Assembly: GCF_003918875.1 (NCBI RefSeq)
Contig: NW_025766968.1
Location: 5,642,001-5,706,000, forward strand
Source of the DNA: Haliotis rubra
Taxonomy: Eukaryota
Length of the DNA: 64,000 nt
Reading direction: 5' to 3'
Both the position numbers and the translations under genes were made by a program. Under the pieces are notes generated by a model. It was given only the letters and a program-made list of their open reading frames with translations. It was not told the DNA's origin and made no database searches. Below, piece by piece: positions 3,571 through 20,042 of this stretch (its first letter is position 1; the number at the start of each line of letters is the position of its first letter).

Positions 3571-4877
3571 AGGTTGTGCTGTTATTGACACTAATGCCAT
3601 TTCTTGAGGATTGTATTCCAGAATCTTGAAAATGACAGCACATGTTAAGGCCATACGTCCATCGTTATCAGCACGACAAAATGAGTCAATGTTTTGCCAT
3701 GTTTGCTTCTCCGAATAAACTGTTCGTTCTTTCTGCGCTTATATTTGCCATTGATTTATTACCCGAAGGACAGTTTATCCAGATAGTAAGTTGAAAGGGG
3801 GGTTTGGATAAGTTCCTTTTGTTTGGTTAAAGGCCGGGGTTCAAATCATAACACAAATTGGGTGTGGCTACATTGCCTTGTGAAAGCTGTCTTTCGATAC
3901 ATAGCAAAGCTGTATTCAAGTACATTGAATTATCACCAAATCGACTTACCTGTCCATAGTGATATTAAGCCATAGTATACAAAAGGATGTTGTGAAATAA
4001 GACTCACTTCAAAATGTGTTGATGCAGACAGTCTCCAAAATACATTTTGAAAATACATTTCTCTTTTTGAAACACTGGTTTTAATTTGCCACTGGATCAG
4101 TCAGGTGACCAGAGGGGATGCGTTGTCATAGAAACAAGCCTGTGGGTGGAGGTTAAAGCCTCATTGAGGGTTTCTTTTTTAATTTTTTCCTCCCCTCCCC
4201 CACTCCTTGATCCCCTGTTGTACAGGGATATACATTGATTTGACTCGGACATCCAGCGGAACATTTGATTCTTCCCAGTGGGCTGACATTGGCTTGTATT
4301 TCTGTTATCATGATCAACACATCAGCTGGGCAAATTTAATTCTGTTCTAAAGTAAACCTTTGTCGTCCTAACTTCAATATGATAGCATAAAATGCTCTAA
4401 ACCGCATTAATAACATAACAGTTGTACCCGAACCCCTAAAGCCCCAAATGAACCTTGTTAGTTTTAGCATGCATTTCTACTAGCGTGTCAGATCACACTT
4501 CATTGTCTCCTAGTACCGGAATATACTTGACATTCTCATTTTCTGGCCGAACATACTGATTTCCCCACAAGATGGATCCAAGTAAGCGACCTGCTCGTTT
4601 TACAATGGAAATACCTGGTGATCATGAAGTCTGAAAGCTGAAACAGGTTACCGCACACCTGAAAGCAGAGACAAACATGCCTGTTTATAATGCTGAGGTA
4701 CTGGGCCGGGCACTGTAATATTATCTCCAGCATCATGGTGTGATTGCCCCAAAACAACCACCAGTTACACACCTGACCGCCAAACCTGGTGACTGATGAC
4801 ACGTTTATCATCATATCTGAATCATCTATGAAAATGTGTTTGGATGTAGCGGAGGAGCATGGACGAAAATGTTCCAA

Positions 4878-5011
4878 GAGTGAGTGAGTATGGTTTTATG
4901 CCGCTTTTAGCAATATTCCTGCAATATGACGGCGGGTACACCAGAAATGGGCTTCACACATTGTATCTATGTGGGGAATCCAACCCGGGTCTTCGGCGTG
5001 ACGAGCGAACG
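4878..5011 (-). mobile_element. SINE family B (tRNA-Asp-like head, about 160 bp), 5'-truncated
   Basis: Shares body gaagcccatttctggtgt and the (actc)n tail with other family B copies. Confidence 0.85.
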
Positions 5012-5235: not shown

Positions 5236-5401
5236 CCTACAGAAGGACTAATATGAACTCCGTAACGTTCAACAAATAAAGAAGTTGATATCAGCAAATA
5301 TCTTGACTCGCTGTCAAGTTGGAAAATTGTTGAGTGCGGAGCTAATCACTACACAGGCACAAACAACAATTGTAGTGGACCCACTCCGCTATATGATTGA
5401 A

Positions 5402-5546
5402 TGAGTGAGTATGGTTTTACGCCACTTTTAGCAATATCAAGGCGGGGGACACAAGAAAAGGGCTTCACACATCGTACCCATGTGAGGAATCGAACCCGGG
5501 TCTTCGGCGTGACGAGCGAACGCTTTAACTACCCCGCCGACCCGCC
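5402..5546 (-). mobile_element. SINE family B, upstream of CPQ copy A
   Basis: B box (gaatcgaacc on +), family body and tail. Confidence 0.85.
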
Positions 5547-5913
5547 ATATGAATAACACCAAAGCACGCTGAAGCTTGTGGTGATGTATGCTATTCAGCA
5601 GAACATTTGTTGACGTCAGTTTGGGCAGACAGCAAGTGGTTGAGTTAATATATTGTTTTTTAATTGTTAAAATAGGAAATCGGAGGATTATATCCACGTT
5701 CGGGCTTTGTACCAGCAGCGAAACGCAGTGCACAGCTTGACGCGAAGGCGTCACAGGTCCACAGGTATATGGACTTAAAACGTGATGAAAGCTGCTACAA
5801 GCTCATCAATTGGGCTTCAGATGCCGCAGTAGCGACCTAGTTTGTGGTCATTTGTGGTCGAGGTCTCCTTGGATTGTTCAGTCACTTGGTTGTCAGTTTC
5901 AGTGCATCAAGCA

Positions 5914-7311
5914 ATGGAGGCGTTAGGTATTTTGTTACTCGGTTCCATTTGTTGTGTGTCTGCGGGGCCAGTGAAGGTTACCAGTGTGAAAGACGAAATC
6001 AAAAGCCACCGCGCTGATGCGGAACGTATAATTAACCTGGTGGTCAATGGAAGTGCTAAAGGACAGACATACAACCGACTGGCCGAGTTTGTGGACACAT
6101 TCGGGAGTCGTATTGCGGGTTCTCAGAATCTTGAAAACGCCATTGATTACATGATGAAGAAGTTGAATGAGGATGATCTGGAGAATGTACACGGAGAGTC
6201 CGCCATGGTGCCCCACTGGGTGCGAGGGAAGGAGTCAGCCACCCTGGAGCAGCCACGGATCCTACCCCTCAACATACTGGGTCTTGGGGGTAGCATCGGC
6301 ACCCCTCCCGAGGGCATCACGGCTGAGGTCATTGTGGTCAAGACGTTTGACGAGTTGAAGCGGAGAGCTGCCGAGGCCCGCGGGAAGATAGTGGTGTACA
6401 ACGAGGACTGGGTAGGGTATGGAGCGACTGTCCAGTATCGTTCACTGGGAGCTGTGGAGGCGGCCAAAGTGGGTGCTGTGGCCTCTCTCATACGTAGTGT
6501 GACCCCCTTCTCTATAGACAGCCCCCACACCGGCTGGCAGGACTACAGCGACAACGTCACCAAGATACCTACAGCCTGCATCACGATAGAGATCGCCCAG
6601 ATGCTGCATAGGATGTCCTTGAGAGGGGAGAAGATCGTCATCAACCTCAAGATGGAAGCTCAGAACCTGCCCATGGTCAAGTCCAGGAACACAGTGGCTG
6701 AGATTAAGGGCAGTACATACCCGGATGAAGTCGTGATCGTGAGCGGCCACCTTGACAGCTGGGACGTGGGGCAGGGGGCGATGGACGACGGCGGCGGTGC
6801 CTTCATTTCCTGGCAGGCCCTGTCTCTCGTCCGCCAACTGGGACTTCGCCCTAAGCGTACCCTCAGGATGATCATGTGGACTGCAGAAGAAGAGGGGGTT
6901 TATGGAGCGAAGCAGTATTTCAAGGACCACCAGGACGAAATCCCCAAACACGATCTGGTGATGGAATCGGATCTCGGTACGTTCAACCCAAGAGGTCTCC
7001 AGTTCTCCGGCAACAAGGCAGCCACAGCTATCATGAAGGAGGTCGCCCAACTTCTCAGTTCCATCAACAGGACAACCCTCTACAGTCCCGCAGATGTCAG
7101 CGACACCGGTCTTTGGAAGAACATCGGTGTCCCAAGCGGCAGCATAGAGAACGACAACGAAAACTACTTCTACTTCCACCACAGCAACGGTGACATGATG
7201 ACAGTGGAGAACTCCGGCGTCCTTGACCTTTGTTCCGCCATCTGGGCAGTGGCGGCGTATGTGGTAGCTGACCTTGACGCTATGCTTCCACGGGACATTG
7301 TGAACGGTTGA
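5914..7311 (+). CDS. CPQ: Carboxypeptidase Q (M28 metallopeptidase), copy A; intronless CDS, 465 aa, signal peptide
   Basis: ATG at 5914 (gcaATGG) begins a hydrophobic signal peptide; the ORF-track start at 5842 is a TTG. PA domain (RGKIVVYN...ASLIRSV). M28 metal-binding and catalytic motifs SGHLDSWD, GAMDDG, WTAEEEG, MESD, FHHSNGD; C-terminal MLPR as in animal CPQ. Confidence 0.95.
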   Translation: MEALGILLLGSICCVSAGPVKVTSVKDEIKSHRADAERIINLVVNGSAKGQTYNRLAEFVDTFGSRIAGSQNLENAIDYMMKKLNEDDLENVHGESAMVPHWVRGKESATLEQPRILPLNILGLGGSIGTPPEGITAEVIVVKTFDELKRRAAEARGKIVVYNEDWVGYGATVQYRSLGAVEAAKVGAVASLIRSVTPFSIDSPHTGWQDYSDNVTKIPTACITIEIAQMLHRMSLRGEKIVINLKMEAQNLPMVKSRNTVAEIKGSTYPDEVVIVSGHLDSWDVGQGAMDDGGGAFISWQALSLVRQLGLRPKRTLRMIMWTAEEEGVYGAKQYFKDHQDEIPKHDLVMESDLGTFNPRGLQFSGNKAATAIMKEVAQLLSSINRTTLYSPADVSDTGLWKNIGVPSGSIENDNENYFYFHHSNGDMMTVENSGVLDLCSAIWAVAAYVVADLDAMLPRDIVNG

Positions 7312-7453
7312 CTATTTATTTCAAGGTAATACATGTTAAGCTTTAAAGTGTGTATGTCTGTAATATGTAACAACTGCCTAATTTTGTGTCTTATTAGATG
7401 TAACTTCATTTTGTTGCTGCAAATCTATTTCAAGTTGGTACATTTGGAAAGTA

Positions 7454-7611
7454 ACGTATTTCCTCTAATAAGCGCCCGGACGCTTATTTTTTCAACAGAC
7501 TTATTAGAGGCCAAGCGCTTATTGCGCTTACTGGGCGTAATTAATTATTTCTTAATCGCTGCTTAACCTCCGGCGCTTATTAGTTTCCGGCGCTTATTAG
7601 AGGAAATACGG
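7454..7611. mobile_element. Tc2/pogo-like MITE just downstream of CPQ copy A
   Basis: 22-bp TIR cgtatttcctctaataagcgcc (7455-7476 and 7589-7610), TA flanks, internal cgcttatt repeats. Confidence 0.8.
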
Positions 7612-7674
7612 TATATGTCCTTGCCGTCACAGGCTCTCGTGTCTTTGCGCAGATTCTTTAAAACTATATAAAAA

Positions 7675-7763
7675 TTTGAGATGACCCCCCGACTCTAAAT
7701 GCTCCACCATATGTCATGATGTATATGTACTGTGAAGCATTTCGAGTCCGGGGTCATCTCAAA
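7675..7763. repeat. Short inverted repeat (about 33-bp arms)
   Basis: tttgagatgacccc..gactc.aaatgct.cac pairs with gtgaagcatttcgagtccggggtcatctcaaa. Confidence 0.75.
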
Positions 7764-8203
7764 AACAATATTTTATTAATCTTTAATCCTCGCAAAGACA
7801 CGAGGGCATGTGCTCGGGGTACGTTTTCCACGTAGCATACAACTGCTCAAGCTCGAAAGATATTTCTGCTTCAATTATGACTTCGAAATCAACAGCGTAT
7901 ATTGCATACGATTTCCAAAGCCTGTGTTTGTTTTCTAGCTTGTTATATAACGCCGGCATGAGTCCCGCTCTGTGACAGCGGCCCATAATAATCGTGCCTG
8001 GACAGGGATTGATATCAAGAGCAATTCTCCACCCCATCGGGCTACGTTAACACGCCATCCGTCAAGCCCCCAAGCTGGGCCAAGCAATCCATTTGGTAGT
8101 CTTTTACAACACGCATATGTTACTAGGATTCGGGCCTGACCCGGAGGTACACCATGACTTCGTTGGTCATTTCAAACATCGTTCTGCTCGGTGTAGCGAA
8201 GAA

Positions 8204-8367
8204 GACTGATTGAGTATAGTTTTACGCGTCTTTTAGCAATATTCCAGCAATATCACGGCGGGGGACACCAGAAATGGGCTTAACAAATTGTACCCATGTC
8301 GGGAATCGAACCCGGATCTTCGGCGTGATGAGCAAACGCTTTAACCACTATGCAACCCCACCGCCCC
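8204..8367 (-). mobile_element. SINE family B
   Basis: Full-length match to family B. Confidence 0.85.
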
Positions 8368-8792
8368 AATGTAGCAAGGATGAAAAGTAGCGGTCAGATG
8401 CGTATCAGAGGTACCTATTACCAGTGTGTGCATTCTCAAGCCCGAAGCATCGTGTGGTAAGGCCTCCGACCTACATTCCCTATCTGTGTTTTCTGTACAG
8501 ATAATGTTGGCTCTAGAGGAAACACCCCGACTTCAGTGGTTCGACATTTGCGTGCATGTCGTTTGACCTTGTACTTACTTATACGTAAAACCCAAGATGT
8601 CTTTTGAGGTAAGCAGTCGGCTCACACTTAGTCTGATACGTAGTTCAAGAAATAAAGTCTTAAGGTTAAAAAATATATACCCTCAAAAAATGTATGACAC
8701 CAGGAGCCCAGAACAATGGCTGAGACTTGCCCAATCATTCTAGACTTGAGTTGGGCTCCTTTCTTAATACCTCGGGGATGGGAAACAGACTG

Positions 8793-9035
8793 AGTGAGTG
8801 AGTTTGGTTTTACGCCGCACTCAGCAATATTCCAGCTATATGGTGGCGGTCTGTAAATAATCGAGTCTGGACCAGACAATCCAGTGATCAACAGCATGAG
8901 CATCGATCTGCGCAATTAGGAACCGATGACATGTCTCAACCAAGTCAGCGAGCCTGACCACCCGATCCCGTTAGTCGCCTCTTACGACAAACATGGGTTA
9001 CTGAAGATCAATCCTAGCCCGGATCTTCACGGGTA
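8793..9035 (-). mobile_element. SINE-like family C (about 245 bp, no tRNA head)
   Basis: 13-bp TSD gggaaacagactg (8780-8792 and 9036-9048); (actc)n tail shared with family B. Confidence 0.9.
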
Positions 9036-9727
9036 GGGAAACAGACTGCTACATACTGGTGGGAAGACTGAACCAAAACTATCCGTGGTATGGACTCAAA
9101 CTGTTGCATTTCCTAGCAACACCGCATGATACAGGACTGCCCGCGCCCGCTGATGACACATGACATGATCATGAAGACAAAGAGAGGAACCAAGGAATTT
9201 ACACTGCATGCAGGGGATAAAACCCGTCGGGAAATTGTGGACCTTCATGGGTGTCATGGCCGTGAAAGGATTAGTGGAAACTATTCATTTGAGTGTTGTG
9301 GGATGTGTGCCCAGCACCCCATTTTATTTGGTGAAATGCCTTGGGCTGTGCCCCTGCTTCGGTGAGGGAAGGGAGCTGGTAGTTTAAGAATACTCGCTCC
9401 AGGAACGAGGTTCCACTAACACACTCCATTGACACTCGCTCCATTTAGAAGCGTAGTGGGATAGACCAGTACTATCACTCGGCCGGTCATGCCAAGCCCC
9501 GTGTACTATCTCCTTTAGCCTGGATTTGTCCTTATTCCATTATCATTTTGCAAATTATAAATGTCTGTTTAAATTCTTTTCAAATCGGATATACATGTTT
9601 TCGATATATGCAATATTTCTGAAATCCCCCAAAACGGTGGCTCATAGCTCATTGTGGTGGAACATTATATATAATGTTTCTGGCAAAGGGTACACTCTTG
9701 GTATTCTTGGTGCTGCTTGGGAGAAGA

Positions 9728-9890
9728 GTGAGTGAGTTTAGTTTTGAGCCGCTTTTGGCAATATTCCAGCAATATCACGGCGGGGGACACCAGAAATGGG
9801 CTTTACACGCTGTACCCATGTGGGGAATCGAACGCTGGTCTTCGGCGTGAAGAGCGAACGCTTTAACCACGGGACTTCCTCATCGTCCCT
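9728..9890 (-). mobile_element. SINE family B with TSD
   Basis: 12-bp TSD cttgggagaaga (9716-9727 and 9891-9902). Confidence 0.88.
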
Positions 9891-10606
9891 CTTGGGAGAA
9901 GAAAATACATGTAACAAAACAGAAGAATGATGTTCTTGCAAGAAGAACGGTCTGAGGCCTTCTCCAATAACGCACCCTGAAAGGCTATCATGCTAATGCC
10001 ATGGTAGCTTGAAGCTAAACCTCCAACTAAAATACTCCGGTATGTCTTTTAGAGCAATTGGTCGGGAAATGAAGGTCCACTATACAGTCCGTTTGATTTC
10101 ATTAGAGACCGATGAATTGCTCACAAACACAAAAATCAAATAAATGCAACAAAACCAAATTTTGTACAGTCACATGAAATCGACGACCAACTCTGATGAT
10201 TTGTCTCATAATTTTGGACACCCGAATAAAAAAGTTGTTTTACACACACAGTCATTTCACTGCCGCACACACATTATACACAGCTTTGTACTATGTGCAT
10301 TGGTCCCATTATGCTGGGCATATTTTGCATGATTGTGTTGATTTGTACTTATCACACAACGTTTTAATGATAATGTTCATATCTTATCCGGACGTTTCAG
10401 GAGAGTTTCTGACCACTTGAGTTAAATGTATGCAAAAGAAATCAATATTTGCGATAATTCATACTACCAACGCGAGAGGCATTAATATAGGCCATGTTCG
10501 GCCTGTTTGCCAATCCTTTTTGTTCGTTCTGTATTGTCTTTCAAATGTATTGTCTGTATTTAGAATAAATACTGTTTAAACCATATACCACTTTTTGTGT
10601 GCTTAA

Positions 10607-11365
10607 AGGTCACATGAAACGTAAAACACAACTTTGCAGATTATGATACCTTTCGGTATGGACTTACAATAACAAATTATCAAAAATGTAAATATAACTT
10701 ATAAAGTTGAAAAATAACGCGATGAAAAAAACCCCGCGAAATAGTTCAAACGATTCACTAAATGCACCCCACGCAGCTGGTGAAAAGTGGTTTCCACAGC
10801 TATGCTGCGCTGCACTGCGCTTATGGCGCATGCGCAGTGAATACGTTCGCACAGCTTGAAGCGGGGATTCCCGGATTATAAGGTCGTGAGCAGGAGTAGT
10901 CTAATCTTGGTTGTGTACACAATCACCAAATAGTGAATAATCTACTCGTTACATAAAAGAACCTTGTTAAGGATCTAGATTTACTCAGTTACGTGTCAAC
11001 CAGTGAAGCGTTCGACATTTCAAGACGGAAAACCGCCGGCGGTGAGTACTCGGGGTAGGCTTTGATGTGAGCTTTTTTTCTAATGTTTAACTGTTTATAT
11101 AATTTCATTTGACTATTTCACACGTTCTTTTTACGGAATCACTTTCTCAGTTCGACACTTAAAAGTAACGTCATTATTTAGCATTGTCAGAATTTCTAAC
11201 TGTGATATAGATATGCCTCTGACACAGACAAAACTCAATGTCTGTTTTATTGACACATGTGCGTCTGCCAGCCTGTCTGCTAATGACAATATGCAATACA
11301 CAACTTCGATCACTGACCTCATGCAATTTGAACTTAACACCTATCAGGCTATACACCATAAACAA
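10607..11365. mobile_element. Truncated copy of the Kolobok-like element
   Basis: ttaa-aggtcacatg start, colinear with 31694-32310; right end missing. Confidence 0.85.
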
Positions 11366-11768
11366 CTGTGATCTATCAGTTGTAATTGTTCGAATGTAAT
11401 ATTTATGTTACTGACTATTAGAACTATAACAAAACTTTGTTTACATCCAGTTAGACTAATGACCTTCCTTGTCGCGGACATCTGCAAACCTACTGGTGCT
11501 GCGTTACACAGTGCTCTCTTCATGCGGTGATTGAAGTGTATTGTCGAACAAACTAACAATGACAAAATCGAACAAACAGAATGGATATTTTATTAAAATT
11601 TGAAAAGTACATATCGCACAAAGGAACAGATGATATCAAGTGACTGATTGGCATTGAAAAGGTGCAAAACATTGACACACATTTTCCTTATCAAAATACT
11701 GTTGACTATGTACAACATTCGTGGATAATGGCCGACTCCGTAGTCCAGTGGATAGCGCGTCTGCCTAG

Positions 11769-12017
11769 AGAGTGAGTATGGTTTTACACCGTTTTAGTTC
11801 AAAGCAATATCACGGAGGGGACACTAGAAATGGGCTTTAAACATTGTACTCGTGTGAGGAATCGAACCCATTAGTCGTTAAAGCGTTCGCTCGTCTCGCT
11901 GAAGACCCGGGTTCGAATACCCACATTGGTACAATGTGGGAAGCCCATTTCTGGTGTCCCCCGTCGTGATACTGCTGAAACATTGCTAAAAGCGGCGTAA
12001 AACTGAACTCACTCACT
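11769..12017. mobile_element. Two abutting family B SINEs, head-to-head
   Basis: Minus copy about 11769-11869 and plus copy about 11871-12017. Confidence 0.8.
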
Positions 12018-13280
12018 TCACGTGACCGCACCCCCTCGGCAACACCGACATCATGTATCGGTACACGTTGGTGCATGCCCTCGGACACTACCAGACAGAG
12101 AGGAAAAATAAATACATTTACGAGTCCAATTATCCTGACTACTAAGATACACATTCTGGGAGAGAACGGTGACAGTTCAAGGGTTATGCTAGCAAACCAA
12201 GCCTATCGAGGAACTGATCATTTTCAGCAATTTTTCCACTGACAAAACATGTATTCGAGAATAATATCAACAGAATTCTGTTCAGAACAGCGTGTATGTC
12301 AATGTACTTCCACGCATGTAACATGTTATATCGCGGATTACACATTCTCAGTACCGACTCTCGTACTTTCGTTAGGATGAGTCCCATCCACACTCTGAGA
12401 GAGTGGGTTCGAATCCCGGATGTGACTCAAACTAACAAAGGTACTAGGATCTGTATTTTACTGAGACAGCGATCCAAAATATTACATGTTACATTTGAAC
12501 ACTTTCTAAATGGCATTGTGTATTCATACCTCCTCACGTATTATTTATTTATTATTATCATATCATACTTCCCCACGTATTATTTAATTTATCCTGTATG
12601 TAAATCTTAACACACACACTAATGTATTTTGTATCCTGTAGGTAAACTCGGGTGAAAGACACACACTCGTGAAAACGTTGATATATAACAGATTTAACTA
12701 AATAATTCTGCTCATGTACTCGGGCAGAAAAATATTGAATATACTCGCCGAAACAATCCATACATACAGCTGTTACCACGCATGTTCAGACAATAAACAT
12801 TGCAAAACATATTAACGTCCAGTACACCAAAGTTCAAAATTAGACTTGCATTCTGTGTCGAATAATTGTGCTTTCCAGAACTAAATACGAATAAGTTGTC
12901 GAACCATATTAACAAAACGGATCCTCCATGTATATGCGCATCAAATTTAGATGCAAATTTAACTAAATAATATATTATTGCAAACATGTGACCAGAGCTC
13001 TGCAACATACAATATCAATGCTAATGTTGTCAGACCCTACCTTTCAAACATTACTTCCATTCGCGACATCTGAGATTGAGCCAATACCGTGAGCTTGTCA
13101 CGATTGGTACCCTTTGAAACAGTGATCGAGTTGGTGTTATACCATGACAAACTAATGTGATCGTTGATTTCCAGGTTGTGCTATCGTGATTTAGGGGCGT
13201 TAACAGGAGTGGATATAATATGCAACATATTCGTACGAGCATCGTGACGCGTCGAAATCGGACGGATATGAACTACTTGA

Positions 13281-14690
13281 TCATAGTTGAAGTCGACCTT
13301 GTGCCGTATCCCTTGGGAGCAAGGTGTCAAGGTCAGCCACTACGTACGCCGCCACTGCCCAGATGGCGGAACAAAGATCAAGGACGCTGGAGTTCTCCAC
13401 CGTCATCATGTCTCCGTTGCTGTGGTGGAAGTAGAAGTAGTTTTCGTTGTCGTTCTCTATGCTGCCACTTGGGACACCGATATTTTCCCAAAGGGTAGTG
13501 TCACTGACATCTGCGGGACTGTAGAGGGTTGTCCTGTTGATGGAACTGAGAAGTTGGGCGACCTCCTTCATGATAGCTGTGGCTGCCTTGTTGCCGGAGA
13601 ACTGGAGACCTCTTGGGTTGAAGGTTCCCATGTCTGATTCCATTACCAAGCTCTGTTTTGGAATTTCAGCTTTGTGTTGTTTAAAGTACTCCTGTGCGCC
13701 CCAGAGCCCTTCTTCCTCCCCAGTCCACATGATCATCCTGAGGGTACGCTTAGGGCGAAGTCCCAGTTGGCGGACGAGAGACAGGGCCTGCCAGGAAATG
13801 AAGGCACCGCCGCCGTCGTCCATAGCCCCCTGCCCCACGTCCCAGCTGTCAAGGTGGCCGCTCACGATCACGACTTCATCCGGGTATGTACTGCCCTTAA
13901 TCTCAGCCACTGTGTTCCTGGACTTGACCATGGGCAGGTTCTGAGCTTCCATCTTGAGGTTGATGACGATCTTCTCCCCTCTCAAGGACATCCTATGCAG
14001 CATCTGGGCGATCTCTATCGTGATGCAGGCTGTAGGTATCTTGGTGACGTTGTCGCTGTAGTCCTGCCAGCCGGTGTGGGGGCTGTCTATAGAGAAGGGG
14101 GTCACACTACGTATGAGGGAGGCCACAGCACCCACTTTGGCCGCTTCCACAGCTCCCAGTGAACGATACTGGACAGTCGCTCCATACCCTACCCAGTCCT
14201 CGTTGTACACCACTATCTTCCCGCGGGCCTCGGCAGCTCTCCGCTTCAACTCGTCAAACGTCTTGACCACAATGACCTCAGCCGTGATGCCCTCGGGAGG
14301 GGTGCCGATGCTACCTCCAAGACCCAGTATGTTGAGGGGTAGGATCCGTGGCTGCTCCAGGGTGGCTGACTCCTTCCCTCGCACCCAGTGGGGCACCATG
14401 GCGGACTCTCCGTGTACATTCTCCAGATCATCCTCATTCAACTTCTTCATTATGTAATCAATGGCGTTTTCAAGATTCTGAGAACCCGCAATACGACTCC
14501 CGAATGTGTCCACAAACTCGGCCAGTCGGTTATATGTCTGTCCTTTAGCACTTCCATTGACCACCAGGTTAATTATTCGTTCCGCATCAGCACGGTGACT
14601 TTCGATTTCGTCTTTCACACTGTGGAAAGTTAGTGGGATCGAAAACACAGACACGAAAGCTACTGTTAACAGCAATAACGTAAACTCCAT
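13281..14690 (-). CDS. CPQ: Carboxypeptidase Q, copy B; intronless CDS, 469 aa, signal peptide
   Basis: Same motifs as copy A (SGHLDSWD, GAMDDG, WTGEEEG, MESD, FHHSNGD); different signal peptide MEFTLLLLTVAFVSVFS; inverted relative to copy A. Confidence 0.95.
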   Translation of the reverse strand: MEFTLLLLTVAFVSVFSIPLTFHSVKDEIESHRADAERIINLVVNGSAKGQTYNRLAEFVDTFGSRIAGSQNLENAIDYIMKKLNEDDLENVHGESAMVPHWVRGKESATLEQPRILPLNILGLGGSIGTPPEGITAEVIVVKTFDELKRRAAEARGKIVVYNEDWVGYGATVQYRSLGAVEAAKVGAVASLIRSVTPFSIDSPHTGWQDYSDNVTKIPTACITIEIAQMLHRMSLRGEKIVINLKMEAQNLPMVKSRNTVAEIKGSTYPDEVVIVSGHLDSWDVGQGAMDDGGGAFISWQALSLVRQLGLRPKRTLRMIMWTGEEEGLWGAQEYFKQHKAEIPKQSLVMESDMGTFNPRGLQFSGNKAATAIMKEVAQLLSSINRTTLYSPADVSDTTLWENIGVPSGSIENDNENYFYFHHSNGDMMTVENSSVLDLCSAIWAVAAYVVADLDTLLPRDTAQGRLQL

Positions 14691-15432
14691 GTTAATTATG
14701 TCTCATACAGTTTGCCACTAAGACATTCACAGATAACCTGTATCGCAGTGACCCAATGACCCTATCGTCGCTGAAACAAACTCACCGCGCTGCCTGCTGC
14801 TGCGGGCGTGAACTGAGCGTCATGTGACCAACACTACTGTACCGAGCGCTGAACGAACTCCGTGCTTTGTATTAACTCGCACCTGTACAACGTGACACAT
14901 GCTGAAATGCTTGATATGAACACACGCTATCAGGTGGAATGATATACATCCGGAGTGGTATAAATGATATGTGTTGTGTACGATATCCTCTGATCCATTC
15001 GTCAAAACTCGCCCTTTTCCGTAACACGGGATGACACGAGAGGTCACAAATGAAACATACTTTTTTCAGAAGGCAACGTTTTCGTGCATGCAGTTGGCCT
15101 CTGCTTTAATTATACTGTCCCGATCTACTAGAGCATACAGTTCTGCCTTCGTTGATCTGACACTAGGATTTGTTACAATCGTTATTATTGGTGGTTGGAC
15201 TGCATGCCTGTCAAACAATTTGATGAAGGGACAGAAGGTCGGTCATTCTGGGACAGTGGGTCGCAGGACAATACATCTTTACAAGTTAAGGAGACCGTAT
15301 CGTTTGCACTCCGCTGGACCTCCATGTCAGCACGCGGTGGATAAATACGCAAATAATGATGTTTTTCAATTTCTCCCAAACCACTATACTTTGCGCAGGG
15401 CTTGTTTTGTCGGCAACTTATCTTTACCTATA

Positions 15433-16048: not shown

Positions 16049-16530
16049 GTCACACTAAGAAGGAGAGAGGCCACAGCACCCACTTTGACCGCCCCCACAG
16101 CTCCCAGTGAACAATACTGGACAGTCGCTCCATACCCTACCCAGTCCTCGTTATAGGTGAGGTGAAATTGGGTTTGACGTCGTACTTGAAAATATTTCGC
16201 TCATATGACGACGTGCATGCGTGTGTATATGTGTATGTGCGGCTGCTTGTACTAGCCCAGACTTAAGCTGGTTTTATAGTGCTAGCTCACTGAGATACCA
16301 TGCCGCAGTTAAGCATGAATACCCCACTCAGACACATTATACTGACTCCGAGCCGACCAGTCCATGTTGTACACATTAATGCCGAGCGCCAGACTGAGAC
16401 CAACAAGTACCATATTTTAACGTCTTTTAGTACGACGCGACCGGGGATCGAACCCGCGACCTTCCGCTCTCCGGGCGGACGCTCTAACCACTACACCACG
16501 GAGGCGGTCTCCTCGTTATAGACCACGATC
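16049..16530 (-). pseudogene. Short CPQ gene fragment (about 120 bp) interrupted by a SINE
   Basis: 16049-16156 plus 16522-16530 align to 14101-14217 of copy B and translate as IVVYNEDWVGYGATVQYCSLGAVGAVKVGAVASLLLSV. Confidence 0.88.
16157..16509 (-). mobile_element. SINE family A, full length, inserted in the CPQ fragment
   Basis: 12-bp TSD tcctcgttatag (16145-16156 and 16510-16521); same 5' end gaccgcctcc as the copy at 2530. Confidence 0.9.
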
Positions 16531-18415: not shown

Positions 18416-19254
18416 TTTGTGAACTGACTTTTGACAAGGGCGTGTCACAATGCCTAGTGTCAAATCATACAGATTTCGATATTATCCTGTCGTCAGCTGA
18501 ACATGTACAGTGATTAATGAAAACACCACAAATCACGTTATCATTTCGCAGTAAAAATGGCATAACATAAAATATGCACATTTGCCATATTCCAGTAGTA
18601 TATACAAATACTTTAAGCATTTAAAATGCTGTGAAATATGTTCATATCAGAGACTTGACAAAACAAAATCACCGAGTGTCCAGTCCTTTCACGCTTCTCG
18701 CGACATTTTTTGTTGTCTTATATTCATTGAACAAAATAGCTATCCAAACTCTTTACAAAACACATTGTAATTATGATAATTATAGCACGTTTGATGTCTT
18801 ACAAACTCTACAAGTAGACGAACGTTATGATAATGACTTCACAATATAACTAATTGTTCCTATGTATATATGTATATATATATATTCAGTTGTCATGCAA
18901 ATTAGTATCGTTGATGATAAGACACTTTTCACACAGGTTTAAGGTATCTTTTTTCAAATTCATAAATCTTGAAACTTACTGGTACAGGGAAGATATTTAC
19001 AAACCATAAAACTGTGTAGACGCGCCCATGCAGTAAATCGTAAAGATAACCTAGGCTAGGTTATTATCACTCCTCGGGTTTTTAAAATTTTCGGTCTAAA
19101 TCATTCAGTTTATTCACTCGTAAAGAATTTAAACATTTTACATATTATTTTGACAATAAGTGTAATGAATTGATGCCATTTAAAATAAAACAACTGTTTG
19201 GTTTTTCTCGTTTTGTTATCCAATGAGATAAGCTCTGGACATATTATGCAGGGC

Positions 19255-19365
19255 TGTAATAAACATGGCGACTTTTGTCGCTGGAAAGACGTAGTTGCAT
19301 CGTATAACACAGAAGAATCTAGAAATCCGACGTTTTTGTTACGGTGTGTTACCTTTTTAAGGTAA
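19255..19365 (+). promoter_or_regulatory. Candidate SNUPN transcription start and non-coding first exon
   Basis: YY1-like AACATGGCG at about 19262, locally CpG-rich, donor AAG|gtaaac at 19361; coding exon 1 has an acceptor 3 nt before the ATG, so an upstream exon is expected. Confidence 0.4.
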
Positions 19366-20042
19366 ACTGTGAATATGATTTAAACTTATCACTGAAAGAA
19401 AGACCATTGTCACTCGTTATATCGGGTTGTTGAACTAGTTGTCCGGAATTCGTGCACCTGATCCACCGAAAACATCAACAAGAACTTAAGAAGTTGTTGT
19501 TTTTTAAAAAACAAAATTGGAAACAGCCTTTCTTATTGTTCAGAAACCGGAAACCCGATACAAAATGAAACATAAAATCTGGTTTCATATCTTGTTCACA
19601 GGTTGAACATATTTGGAATAGTATCGATATTATGATTATGGTTGTTGGCACAACCTCAATTTGCCGAGAGCCGCGATGCAGTGCGTCCTCGTACTATAAT
19701 AGTTCGGGGCAAAAGTGTACTCTATTACACAATACATGCTGGAAGAGCGAACTGTATTTCTTAATGAATGTATATGTGTAAGATTGTTTTGTAAAATGTC
19801 ACCTGAATGACATGAATGATTTATATCTTCAAGTCTTTGACTGGCATTTAAAAGGGAGGGAATCTAAGGATGTCATTGTCAACTTCATTGTATAAGGAAG
19901 ACTTACAGTGTTCTAAAATGTAATAACAATGTTTTCTTCTATTATTCATTGTGTTAAAAACGTTTATTTCTAGTGTTGGTTATAATAAGGAAGCTATTCA
20001 AATTCTTTCCCTGACAATTGATATTTTGTGTTGTTCCAGAAG

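What the first reader, a model, noticed from the sequence alone, without database searches (positions are those of the whole stretch)
5914..14690. Inverted CPQ paralogue pair is a mosaic of homogenised and deeply diverged blocks
Seen: about 5984-6883 of copy A matches copy B with only about ten substitutions in 900 bp, including synonymous sites, and near-identity resumes downstream. The signal peptides, C-terminal tails and flanks are unalignable. Inference: the duplication is old, and ongoing gene conversion between the inverted copies keeps most of the CDS identical.
Basis: partly seen in the sequence, partly recalled or inferred. Interest (0 to 1): 0.8.

Follow-up and report, generated by a model that had tools for sequence, protein, structure and literature searches.

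The report
Abalone CPQ gene pair, patchwork conversion
Two neighbouring, oppositely oriented carboxypeptidase Q-like genes of the abalone Haliotis rubra are an old duplicate pair in which most of the coding sequence keeps being copied from one gene to the other, while four short segments stay distinct; it is a clean example of a well-known process.

Summary
The window is Haliotis rubra scaffold QXJH01000003.1. Copy A (5914-7311, +) and copy B (13281-14690, -) are intact single-exon M28/carboxypeptidase Q-like genes.

They differ at 10 of 902 bases in 5982-6883, 35 of 102 in 6884-6985, 0 of 115 in 6986-7100, 8 of 25 in 7101-7125 and 13 of 167 in 7126-7292. Signal peptides, tails and flanks do not align.

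The same convergent pair, with orthologous flanks, is present in H. rufescens and H. cracherodii. In the near-identical blocks, every informative site groups the two copies within a species (56 such sites in a row in the first block). In the divergent blocks, sites group A with A and B with B. That gives 9 runs, against at least 39 in 100,000 shuffles.

Synonymous divergence in the main block is 0.03-0.04 between paralogues and 0.32 between orthologues. In the divergent island it is saturated. Block boundaries agree within about 12 bases between lineages.

Short-read contigs from three organisms show the same junctions, so this is not an assembly artefact.

Interlocus gene conversion with escaped islands is a known kind of event; this is a new, tidy member. 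Whether selection or mismatch density protects the islands remains open.

The parts
5914..7311 (+). Copy A: intact single-exon carboxypeptidase Q-like gene, 465 aa, Peptidase_M28 domain
   Evidence: ORF and translation. Pfam PF04389 at E 9e-32. Annotated as one CDS in GCA_003918875.1. Orthologues in H. rufescens and H. cracherodii.
13281..14690 (-). Copy B: intact single-exon carboxypeptidase Q-like gene, 469 aa, convergent with A
   Evidence: (PF04389, E 6e-33). Orthologue P0001 in H. rufescens is 95% identical. An intact but unannotated orthologue lies in H. cracherodii at L003:18074-19483.
5914..5981 (+). O1: signal-peptide codons of A; the B counterpart is 14623-14690. Not homogenised.
   Evidence: A and B are 43-51% identical, orthologues 78-79%. 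Site patterns here are almost all orthologous. In H. rufescens and H. cracherodii the boundary lies about 11 bases further in, at 5992.
5982..6883 (+). C1: main homogenised block; the B counterpart is 13721-14622
   Evidence: 10-13 differences in 902 bases between paralogues within each of three species, against 65-69 between species. 56 consecutive concerted sites. dS 0.03-0.04 against 0.32. Four-fold sites 3% against 21-22%.
6884..6985 (+). O2: divergent island from the catalytic Glu-Glu motif to the ESD metal-ligand motif; the B counterpart is 13619-13720
   Evidence: A and B are 66-70% identical in all three species, orthologues 91-93%. 24 orthologous sites and 1 of the control pattern. 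dN 0.18-0.20 with dS saturated between paralogues; omega 0.02-0.07 between orthologues. Motifs are conserved against PDB 3IIB.
6986..7100 (+). C2: 115-base homogenised block between two divergent islands; the B counterpart is 13504-13618
   Evidence: 0-2 differences between paralogues against 8-9 between species; 7 concerted sites.
7101..7125 (+). O3: second, small divergent island (DTGLWKNI in A, DTTLWENI in B); the B counterpart is 13479-13503
   Evidence: 8-10 of 25 bases differ between paralogues and 2-3 between orthologues; 5 orthologous sites.
7126..7292 (+). C3: partly homogenised block; the B counterpart is 13312-13478
   Evidence: 13 differences in H. rubra, 6 in H. rufescens and 4 in H. 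cracherodii out of 167. There are 5 concerted sites. In H. rubra dS is 0.36, as high as between species, so conversion is older or rarer here in this lineage.
7293..7311 (+). O4: C-terminal tail and stop of A (RDIVNG*); the B tail, 13281-13311, is longer (RDTAQGRLQL*)
   Evidence: 58% identity between paralogues in all species and 84-100% between orthologues.
7312..13280 (.). Spacer of about 6 kb between the convergent genes, rich in interspersed repeats, with the same orientation in the three species
   Evidence: Repeat families. Two collinear, same-strand anchors align to H. rufescens and H. cracherodii: 7877-8145 and about 12040-12240.

Best explanation
Copies A and B are an ancient duplicate pair of secreted M28 zinc peptidases (carboxypeptidase Q-like), lying tail to tail about 6 kb apart. 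The pair already existed in the common ancestor of H. rubra, H. rufescens and H. cracherodii.

Recurrent non-crossover recombination between the inverted copies (interlocus gene conversion) overwrites three coding blocks: 5982-6883, 6986-7100 and, more weakly, 7126-7292. As a result these blocks evolve in concert within each species.

Four segments are never overwritten and keep the old divergence:
- the signal peptide;
- a roughly 100-base island running from the catalytic Glu-Glu motif to the next Asp metal ligand;
- a roughly 25-base island;
- the C-terminal tail.

Shown here: the age of the pair relative to speciation, the block structure, post-speciation homogenisation in both lineages, and near-identical block boundaries.

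Inferred: the molecular route (synthesis-dependent repair of breaks using the other copy) and the reason the islands persist. My preferred reading is that both mechanisms act. The one-in-three mismatch density in the islands stops heteroduplex formation. In addition, convertants that replace an island are removed by purifying selection, because the islands carry copy-specific functional residues.
For: Pair and age:
- The same convergent pair with orthologous flanks is present in three species.
- The protein tree puts A plus B in one clade (SH-aLRT 100), apart from the unlinked paralogue C.

Block structure:
- Site patterns in the CDS fall into 9 runs, against a minimum of 39 in 100,000 shuffles.
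- Block trees and AU tests give p 7e-63 and 1e-62.
- C1 dS is 0.03-0.04 within species against 0.32-0.33 between orthologues. In O2, dS is saturated and four-fold sites are 64-80% different.

Conversion after the split:
- It occurred in both lineages. Paralogue differences of 10-13 (C1) and 0-2 (C2) compare with 65-69 and 8-9 orthologue differences.
- There are 5 concerted sites and no control-pattern sites between H. rufescens and H. cracherodii.
- Boundaries agree within 12 bases between lineages.

Selection on each copy's island: omega is 0.02-0.07 between orthologues, with 9-11 A/B amino-acid differences out of 34 in each of the three species.

Independent read data:
- Contigs of three organisms end at 6883, and in two of them (X1, X12) the A-type island contig ends at 7011, exactly 30 bases either side of the island.
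- An A-type island contig is joined to both neighbouring blocks.
- A 1859-nt contig from another organism carries B's signal peptide, both B islands and B's tail.
Against: - No conversion event was observed directly; the case is comparative.
- Only two deep lineages are sampled, since H. rufescens and H. cracherodii are close. 'Both lineages' therefore rests on counts, not on many replicates.
- The blocks were delimited from the same alignment that was then used for the trees.
- The exact number of A/B differences inside C1 could not be verified from reads, because Logan contigs drop minor variants.
- Nothing here separates selection from a purely mechanical mismatch barrier as the reason the islands persist.
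- No A- or B-type protein from H. asinina came up in the protein search, although its C paralogue did. Whether that species has the pair is unknown.
Confidence: 0.9

Rival explanations
1. The islands persist only for mechanical reasons. Once a segment has diverged to about one mismatch in three, heteroduplex rejection stops every tract at its edge, so the mosaic perpetuates itself and says nothing about function.
For: - Boundaries coincide exactly with the first dense mismatches in all species.
- The islands are saturated at synonymous sites too, as expected if they simply never recombine.
- Boundaries jitter by about 10 bases at the 5' edge between lineages, as expected for a stochastic mechanical limit.
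Against: - The 115-base block C2 lies between two islands yet was homogenised after the split in both lineages: 0-2 paralogue differences against 8-9 orthologue differences, with 7 concerted sites.
- Tracts started and ended inside 115 identical bases are expected to be rare (established knowledge of minimal homology lengths, not tested here). Longer tracts that also replaced an island must then have been lost.
- Each copy's island is under strong purifying selection (omega 0.02-0.07).
Confidence: 0.4
2. The near-identity is an assembly or polishing artefact: collapse of two diverged copies, or cross-polishing of one copy with reads of the other.
For: - The H. rubra assembly is a scaffold-level long-read assembly, and near-identical inverted copies are prone to cross-polishing.
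- The exact 10 differences in C1 could not be confirmed, because contigs show presence only.
Against: - The same mosaic with the same boundaries is seen in two other species' chromosome-level assemblies.
- Short-read contigs of three organisms break at the island edges. One A-type island contig spans both junctions, and one B-type contig spans all B junctions.
Confidence: 0.02
3. The pair is an invertible cassette. Crossing-over in the inverted repeat flips the 6-kb spacer and swaps the 3' (catalytic) halves between two promoters and signal peptides. This is another first-stage note, s1-339825.
For: A 0.9-kb, 99% identical inverted repeat could physically support inversion by crossover, and inverted orientation is what such a switch needs.
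Against: - In three species' assemblies, A's signal peptide is always linked to A-type O2, O3 and tail, and likewise for B.
- The alignable spacer anchors keep the same order and strand.
- The one long contig from another organism is B-type throughout.
- No joints or strand changes were reported in the laid contigs (table 5).
- Inversion would not homogenise sequence, so it cannot explain the concerted sites.
Confidence: 0.03
4. The duplication is recent, and the islands were pasted into one copy from a third, diverged paralogue.
For: - A third paralogue, C, exists in the genome.
- In the divergent blocks B sits on a long branch of 0.66.
Against: - Both copies, with their islands and orthologous flanks, predate the H. 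rubra / H. rufescens split.
- Neither island version resembles C: in O2, A is 63% and B 51-55% identical to C.
- The unalignable signal peptides, tails and flanks also need an old origin.
- An import from an unknown fourth paralogue before the species split cannot be excluded, but it would not change the finding of ongoing conversion.
Confidence: 0.05

Closest known systems
Interlocus (ectopic, non-allelic) gene conversion and concerted evolution of tandem or inverted duplicates, for example the Drosophila duplicates reviewed in PMC3924832 and primate class I ADH in PMC3409193 (titles and abstracts seen; neither paper was read)
   Same: Paralogues are more alike within species than orthologues are between species, including at synonymous sites. 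Tracts are confined to coding sequence, flanks are diverged, and the block structure is a mosaic.
   Different: Nothing differs in kind. Particular to this case are an intronless M28 peptidase pair in a mollusc, boundaries conserved to about 12 bases between lineages at dS 0.33, and a 115-base converted block enclosed by two unconverted islands.
Arm-to-arm gene conversion in inverted repeats and palindromes (human Y-chromosome palindromes, PMC8600007; title and abstract seen)
   Same: Inverted orientation, a spacer between the arms, and non-crossover homogenisation of the arms.
   Different: The arms here are only 1.3 kb, coincide with the CDS, and are interrupted by old islands. They are autosomal as far as is known. 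The Y palindromes are tens of kilobases to megabases long and nearly uniform.
Carboxypeptidase Q (plasma glutamate carboxypeptidase, MEROPS family M28)
   Same: About 62% protein identity to the amphibian carboxypeptidase Q proteins that are among the vertebrate hits, and 65-68% to mollusc CPQ-like proteins, over the full length. The M28 domain is present and the metal-ligand and Glu-Glu motifs are conserved.
   Different: The A/B lineage is separate from the other Haliotis CPQ-like gene (C) and split from it before Haliotis and Gigantopelta diverged (the grouping with Gigantopelta_1 has only 86% support and involves a long branch). No activity or substrate is known for any of the three.

Membership tests
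Interlocus gene conversion (concerted evolution of paralogues) | Both paralogues are present at orthologous positions in the compared species, so the duplication predates speciation | tested here: met
   The convergent A/B pair is present in H. rubra, H. rufescens and H. cracherodii. The flanks of A (5631-5913, 7312-7434) and of B (14691-14792) align only to the orthologous copy.
Interlocus gene conversion (concerted evolution of paralogues) | Within the tract, paralogues of one species are closer to each other than to their orthologues, at synonymous sites too | tested here: met
   In C1, paralogues are 99% identical and orthologues 92-93%. dS is 0.03-0.04 against 0.32, and four-fold sites differ at 3% against 21-22%. 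The AU test rejects an orthologue clade, p 7e-63.
Interlocus gene conversion (concerted evolution of paralogues) | Outside the tract, orthologues group together | tested here: met
   The B clade has 99/100 support, and a within-species paralogue clade is rejected at p 1e-62. O-pattern sites fill O1-O4.
Interlocus gene conversion (concerted evolution of paralogues) | Significant spatial clustering of shared and unshared sites (GENECONV-type test) | tested here: met
   9 runs against at least 39 in 100,000 shuffles. The longest matching fragment has p = 7e-5 by permutation.
Interlocus gene conversion (concerted evolution of paralogues) | Direct observation of conversion events (pedigree, sperm typing, or segregating convertant haplotypes) | not testable with these tools
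   Only contigs, not raw reads, were available, and contigs drop minor variants.
Carboxypeptidase Q / peptidase family M28 | M28 catalytic domain above the curated threshold | tested here: met
   PF04389 scores 110.8 and 114.7 bits against a cut-off of 21.3.
Carboxypeptidase Q / peptidase family M28 | Co-catalytic zinc ligands and catalytic Glu (motifs HxD, DDG, EE, ESD, HH) intact in both copies | tested here: met
   The motifs HLDSWD, DDGGG, EEEG, MESD and FHHSNGD are present in A and B. They align to the same motifs of PDB 3IIB. Assigning them as ligands rests on established knowledge of M28 enzymes.
Carboxypeptidase Q / peptidase family M28 | Full-length similarity to named carboxypeptidase Q proteins | tested here: met
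   58-68% identity over 93-99% of the length to animal CPQ proteins.
Carboxypeptidase Q / peptidase family M28 | Secretion and peptidase activity | not testable with these tools
   Hydrophobic N-termini are seen in both copies. No signal-peptide predictor or assay was available.
Programmed invertible DNA segment | Both orientations, or chimeric linkage of the flanking parts, are observed | tested here: not met
   The linkage of signal peptide, islands and tail is the same, and the spacer anchors have the same strand, in three species. A long contig of a further organism is B-type throughout, and no joints were reported.
Programmed invertible DNA segment | A dedicated recombinase and short specific crossover sites | not tested
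   Not looked for. The repeat is the coding sequence itself.

The most novel reading that the evidence does not exclude
The four unconverted segments are held apart by selection because A and B have become different enzymes (different S1 pocket or partner contacts around the Glu-Glu to Asp ligand segment, and different targeting through the signal peptide and tail). Conversion keeps the rest of the fold identical. Boundaries conserved over dS 0.33 and a 115-base converted block between two protected islands would make the locus a natural experiment on how short a conversion tract can be and how finely selection can edit it.
Probability: 0.4. Interest if true: 0.5.

Novelty: new member of a known kind. 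Interest (0 to 1): 0.33.

Why it matters
Gene conversion between duplicates misleads dating of duplications and orthology calls. Whole-gene DNA comparison here would suggest a duplication at dS of about 0.07, while the islands show it is saturated.

This pair is a compact, well-delimited case, with three species already showing the same boundaries. It could be used to measure tract lengths, direction and GC bias of conversion in a mollusc. It could also be used to ask whether short islands next to catalytic residues are protected by selection.

For abalone genomics, it warns that short-read assemblies and RNA-seq quantification will confuse the two genes except in the islands.

It does not open a new kind of biology.

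Tried and rejected
- Assembly artefact: rejected on three assemblies plus read contigs.
- Invertible cassette: no chimeric linkage, no inverted spacer, no joints.
- Import of the islands from paralogue C: the islands are no closer to C than the rest of the gene.
- tRNA or Rfam identity for the interspersed repeats around the genes: none found.
- Literature on Haliotis carboxypeptidase Q: no paper in the library holds both terms.
- NG86 dS for the islands is undefined because of saturation, so I used raw four-fold differences instead.
- Polarising concerted substitutions with paralogue C was not attempted, because C is saturated at silent sites (four-fold 65-70% different). The direction of conversion is therefore inferred only at the 5' edge. 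There H. rubra A carries B-type states at 5986, 5988 and 5992.
- GC-biased conversion: GC3 is 0.65-0.69 in the homogenised blocks against 0.47-0.49 in the same columns of C. This is suggestive but confounded by gene-specific codon usage, and concerted changes between the species are balanced (30 against 22), so no claim is made.
- Depth of contigs as copy number: A-only island contigs have roughly 0.35-0.7 of the depth of the C1 contigs beside them. The tool warns that depth is not a copy number, so this is not used as evidence.
- Structure prediction was not run, because the tools return no coordinates and island-to-active-site distances could not have been measured.


Full report
**What is there**

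The window is part of Haliotis rubra scaffold QXJH01000003.1, assembly GCA_003918875.1. Copy A is the ORF from the ATG at 5914 to the stop at 7311 on the + strand (465 aa). Copy B runs from 14690 to 13281 on the - strand (469 aa). The genes are convergent, with about 6 kb of repeat-rich spacer between their stops.

Both proteins carry a Peptidase_M28 domain far above Pfam's threshold. Both are 58-68% identical over their full length to animal carboxypeptidase Q proteins. The motifs that hold the two zinc ions and the catalytic Glu of M28 enzymes (HLDSWD, DDGGG, EEEG, MESD, FHHSNGD) are intact in both. They align with the same motifs of the closest solved structure, 3IIB. Assigning these motifs as ligands is established knowledge of the family, not a test made here. 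Both CDS are single exons in the public annotation.

**The observation**

The two genes form one ungapped inverted repeat of 1359 nt at 94%. B coordinate = 20604 minus A coordinate. Differences are strongly clustered:

| Block | A coordinates | Differences between A and B |
|---|---|---|
| C1 | 5982-6883 | 10 of 902 |
| O2 | 6884-6985 | 35 of 102 |
| C2 | 6986-7100 | 0 of 115 |
| O3 | 7101-7125 | 8 of 25 |
| C3 | 7126-7292 | 13 of 167 |

The signal-peptide codons are 43% identical and the tails 58%. The flanks give no alignment. A permutation of variable sites equals or exceeds the longest matching fragment in 7 of 100,000 trials.

**Related species**

The protein search found close relatives only in Haliotis. 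H. rufescens has the same convergent pair (L001: B at 10001-11410, A at 18529-19926 on the other strand). H. cracherodii has A annotated (L003:10001-11398). It also has an intact but unannotated B at L003:18074-19483.

DNA alignments run beyond the CDS into the flanks only between orthologous copies. Both genes therefore already lay at this place in the common ancestor. A third paralogue, C, is about 67% identical at the DNA level, also has a single exon, and lies elsewhere (L004 in H. rubra, L002 in H. cracherodii).

**Site patterns**

In an alignment of the six A and B sequences, I classified each site with two states shared by two pairs (H. rubra against H. rufescens). 'Concerted' means A = B within each species but different between species. 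'Orthologous' means A = A and B = B but A differs from B.

Along the CDS the string runs as follows:
- orthologous up to 5981;
- 56 concerted sites in a row (5994-6852);
- 24 orthologous sites, interrupted by one control-pattern site (6884-6981);
- 7 concerted (7008-7092);
- 5 orthologous (7108-7122);
- 5 concerted (7159-7290);
- orthologous from 7296.

That is 9 runs among 124 sites. None of 100,000 shuffles had fewer than 39 runs. This test needs no pre-set blocks.

**Distances**

In C1 the paralogues of each species differ at 10-13 of 902 bases, whereas orthologues differ at 65-69. In O2 the paralogues differ at 31-35 of 102 and the orthologues at 7-9.

Nei-Gojobori dS in C1 is 0.03-0.04 within species and 0.32-0.33 between orthologues. 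In O2, dS between paralogues is beyond the range of the correction, and dN is 0.18-0.20.

At four-fold degenerate sites, C1 differs at 3% between paralogues and 21-22% between orthologues. O2 plus O3 differ at 64-80% between paralogues, as much as the comparison with paralogue C. The duplication is therefore several times older than the species split, while the last homogenisation of C1 is about a tenth as old as that split.

**Trees**

| Blocks | Hypothesis tested | Result |
|---|---|---|
| Homogenised (1184 columns) | A orthologues form one clade | Costs 205 log-likelihood units, p-AU 7e-63 |
| Divergent (226 columns) | The two H. rubra copies form one clade | Costs 101 units, p-AU 1e-62 |

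In the divergent blocks the B orthologues form a clade with 99/100 support. The blocks were chosen after seeing the data, so these p-values overstate the case. They agree with the runs test.

A protein tree with other molluscs puts A plus B in one clade (100). Haliotis C sits in another clade together with one of two Gigantopelta paralogues (96). The A/B duplication is therefore younger than the A/B versus C split, which predates Haliotis.

**Conversion in both lineages and recently**

If one lineage had stopped converting at the split, its paralogues should by now differ about as much as orthologues do. Instead all three species show 10-13 differences in C1 against 65-69, and 0-2 in C2 against 8-9.

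Between the closely related H. rufescens and H. cracherodii there are 5 concerted sites (6057, 6299, 6330, 6741, 7251). None show the control pattern (A of one species = B of the other).

At the 5' edge the boundary lies at 5981/5982 in H. rubra and at 5992/5993 in the other two. H. rubra A carries B-type states at 5986, 5988 and 5992, which points to a B-to-A tract in that lineage. The other boundaries coincide within a few bases: 6882-6884, 6981, 7101-7107, 7122-7125 and 7282-7296.

C3 is less homogenised in H. rubra (dS 0.36) than in the other two species (0.07-0.11).

**Not an artefact**

Three assemblies from different projects show the same mosaic. In addition, I laid Logan contigs of four public runs, from three coded organisms, on 5700-7500.

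- In three organisms, contigs end at 6883.
- In two of them (X1, X12), the A-type island contig covers 6854-7011, exactly 30 bases either side of the first and last A/B difference of O2; in X4 it covers 6854-7038. A de Bruijn graph gives this when two copies share the neighbouring sequence.
- This contig joins A's island to C1 and C2 in short-read data.
- Two variants of 7053-7179 or 6996-7167 are present, fitting the A-type and B-type forms of O3.
- In run X8, which the tool only guesses to be RNA, a single 1859-nt contig lies on 5982-7295. It carries B-type letters throughout O2 and O3. Its loose ends read exactly as B's signal-peptide end and B's tail.

Contigs cannot show absence or copy number, so the exact ten differences in C1 remain unverified.

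**Why the islands persist**

Two explanations are compatible with the data.

The first is mechanical. At one mismatch in three, heteroduplex formation stops at the island edge, so the mosaic maintains itself.

The second is selective. Each island is under strong purifying selection within each copy (omega 0.02-0.07 between orthologues). Nine to eleven of 34 residues differ between A and B in every species. The O2 island runs from the residue before the catalytic Glu-Glu motif to just behind the ESD metal-ligand motif. It includes the residue next to that ligand, which is Leu in A and Met in B.

C2 is only 115 bases long, is enclosed by two islands, and was homogenised in both lineages. This suggests that longer tracts which also replace an island do occur and are removed. 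That step rests on general knowledge of the minimal homology needed for recombination, not on a test here. I put roughly even odds on selection contributing.

**Rivals**

- A programmed or frequent inversion that swaps gene halves (another first-stage note) finds no support. The linkage of signal peptide, islands and tail is the same in all assemblies and in the long contig. The alignable spacer anchors keep order and strand. No joints were reported. Inversion would also not homogenise sequence.
- Import of the islands from paralogue C is not supported.
- An import from an unknown paralogue before the species split cannot be excluded, but it would not alter the main conclusion.

**Novelty**

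No paper in the searchable library mentions both Haliotis and carboxypeptidase Q. Concerted evolution of duplicates with escaped segments is well documented in other systems; one search lists examples by title and abstract only, and I did not read those papers. This is a new and unusually tidy member of a known kind, of moderate interest mainly as a model locus and as a caution for annotation and expression work in abalone.

The window holds no N runs.

Noticed in passing
window 16049-16155 (-): An orphan 107-base piece of the CPQ-like coding sequence, equal to A 6397-6503. It has 7 differences from H. rubra A, 9 from B and 11-12 from the H. rufescens/cracherodii copies. It is absent at that place in the other two species. 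Read contigs pile up two- to three-fold over 6371-6553, so further copies may exist elsewhere in the genome.
   Followed up: partly
window 4876-5011, 5384-5551, 8200-8367, 9722-9889, 11804-12017: A short interspersed repeat of about 170 bases, on both strands, around and between the two genes. It has no tRNA or Rfam match, so its class was not determined.
   Followed up: partly
window 7455-7500 and 8802-8994: A very high-copy repeat starts about 145 bases behind the stop of copy A (summed contig depth 4,000-13,000 against about 300 for the gene). Another repeat at 8802-8994 occurs many times in the H. rufescens and H. cracherodii loci. The orthologous alignment of A's 3' flank ends at about 7434-7437, some 20 bases before the first repeat.
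   Followed up: no
window 5982-7292 and L004/L002: Third-codon GC is 0.65-0.69 in the homogenised blocks of A and B. It is 0.47-0.49 in the same columns of the unlinked, non-converting paralogue C. This fits GC-biased gene conversion but is confounded by gene-specific codon usage.
   Followed up: partly
L003:18074-19483 (-): The H. cracherodii orthologue of copy B is an intact 469-codon ORF, but no gene is called there in the collection's gene table.
   Followed up: yes
L001, L002, L003, L004, L005: All three Haliotis CPQ-like genes (A, B and the unlinked C) have single-exon coding sequences. The protein tree suggests two old gastropod CPQ lineages. No A- or B-type protein from H. asinina appeared in the protein search, although its C-type protein did.
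   Followed up: partly
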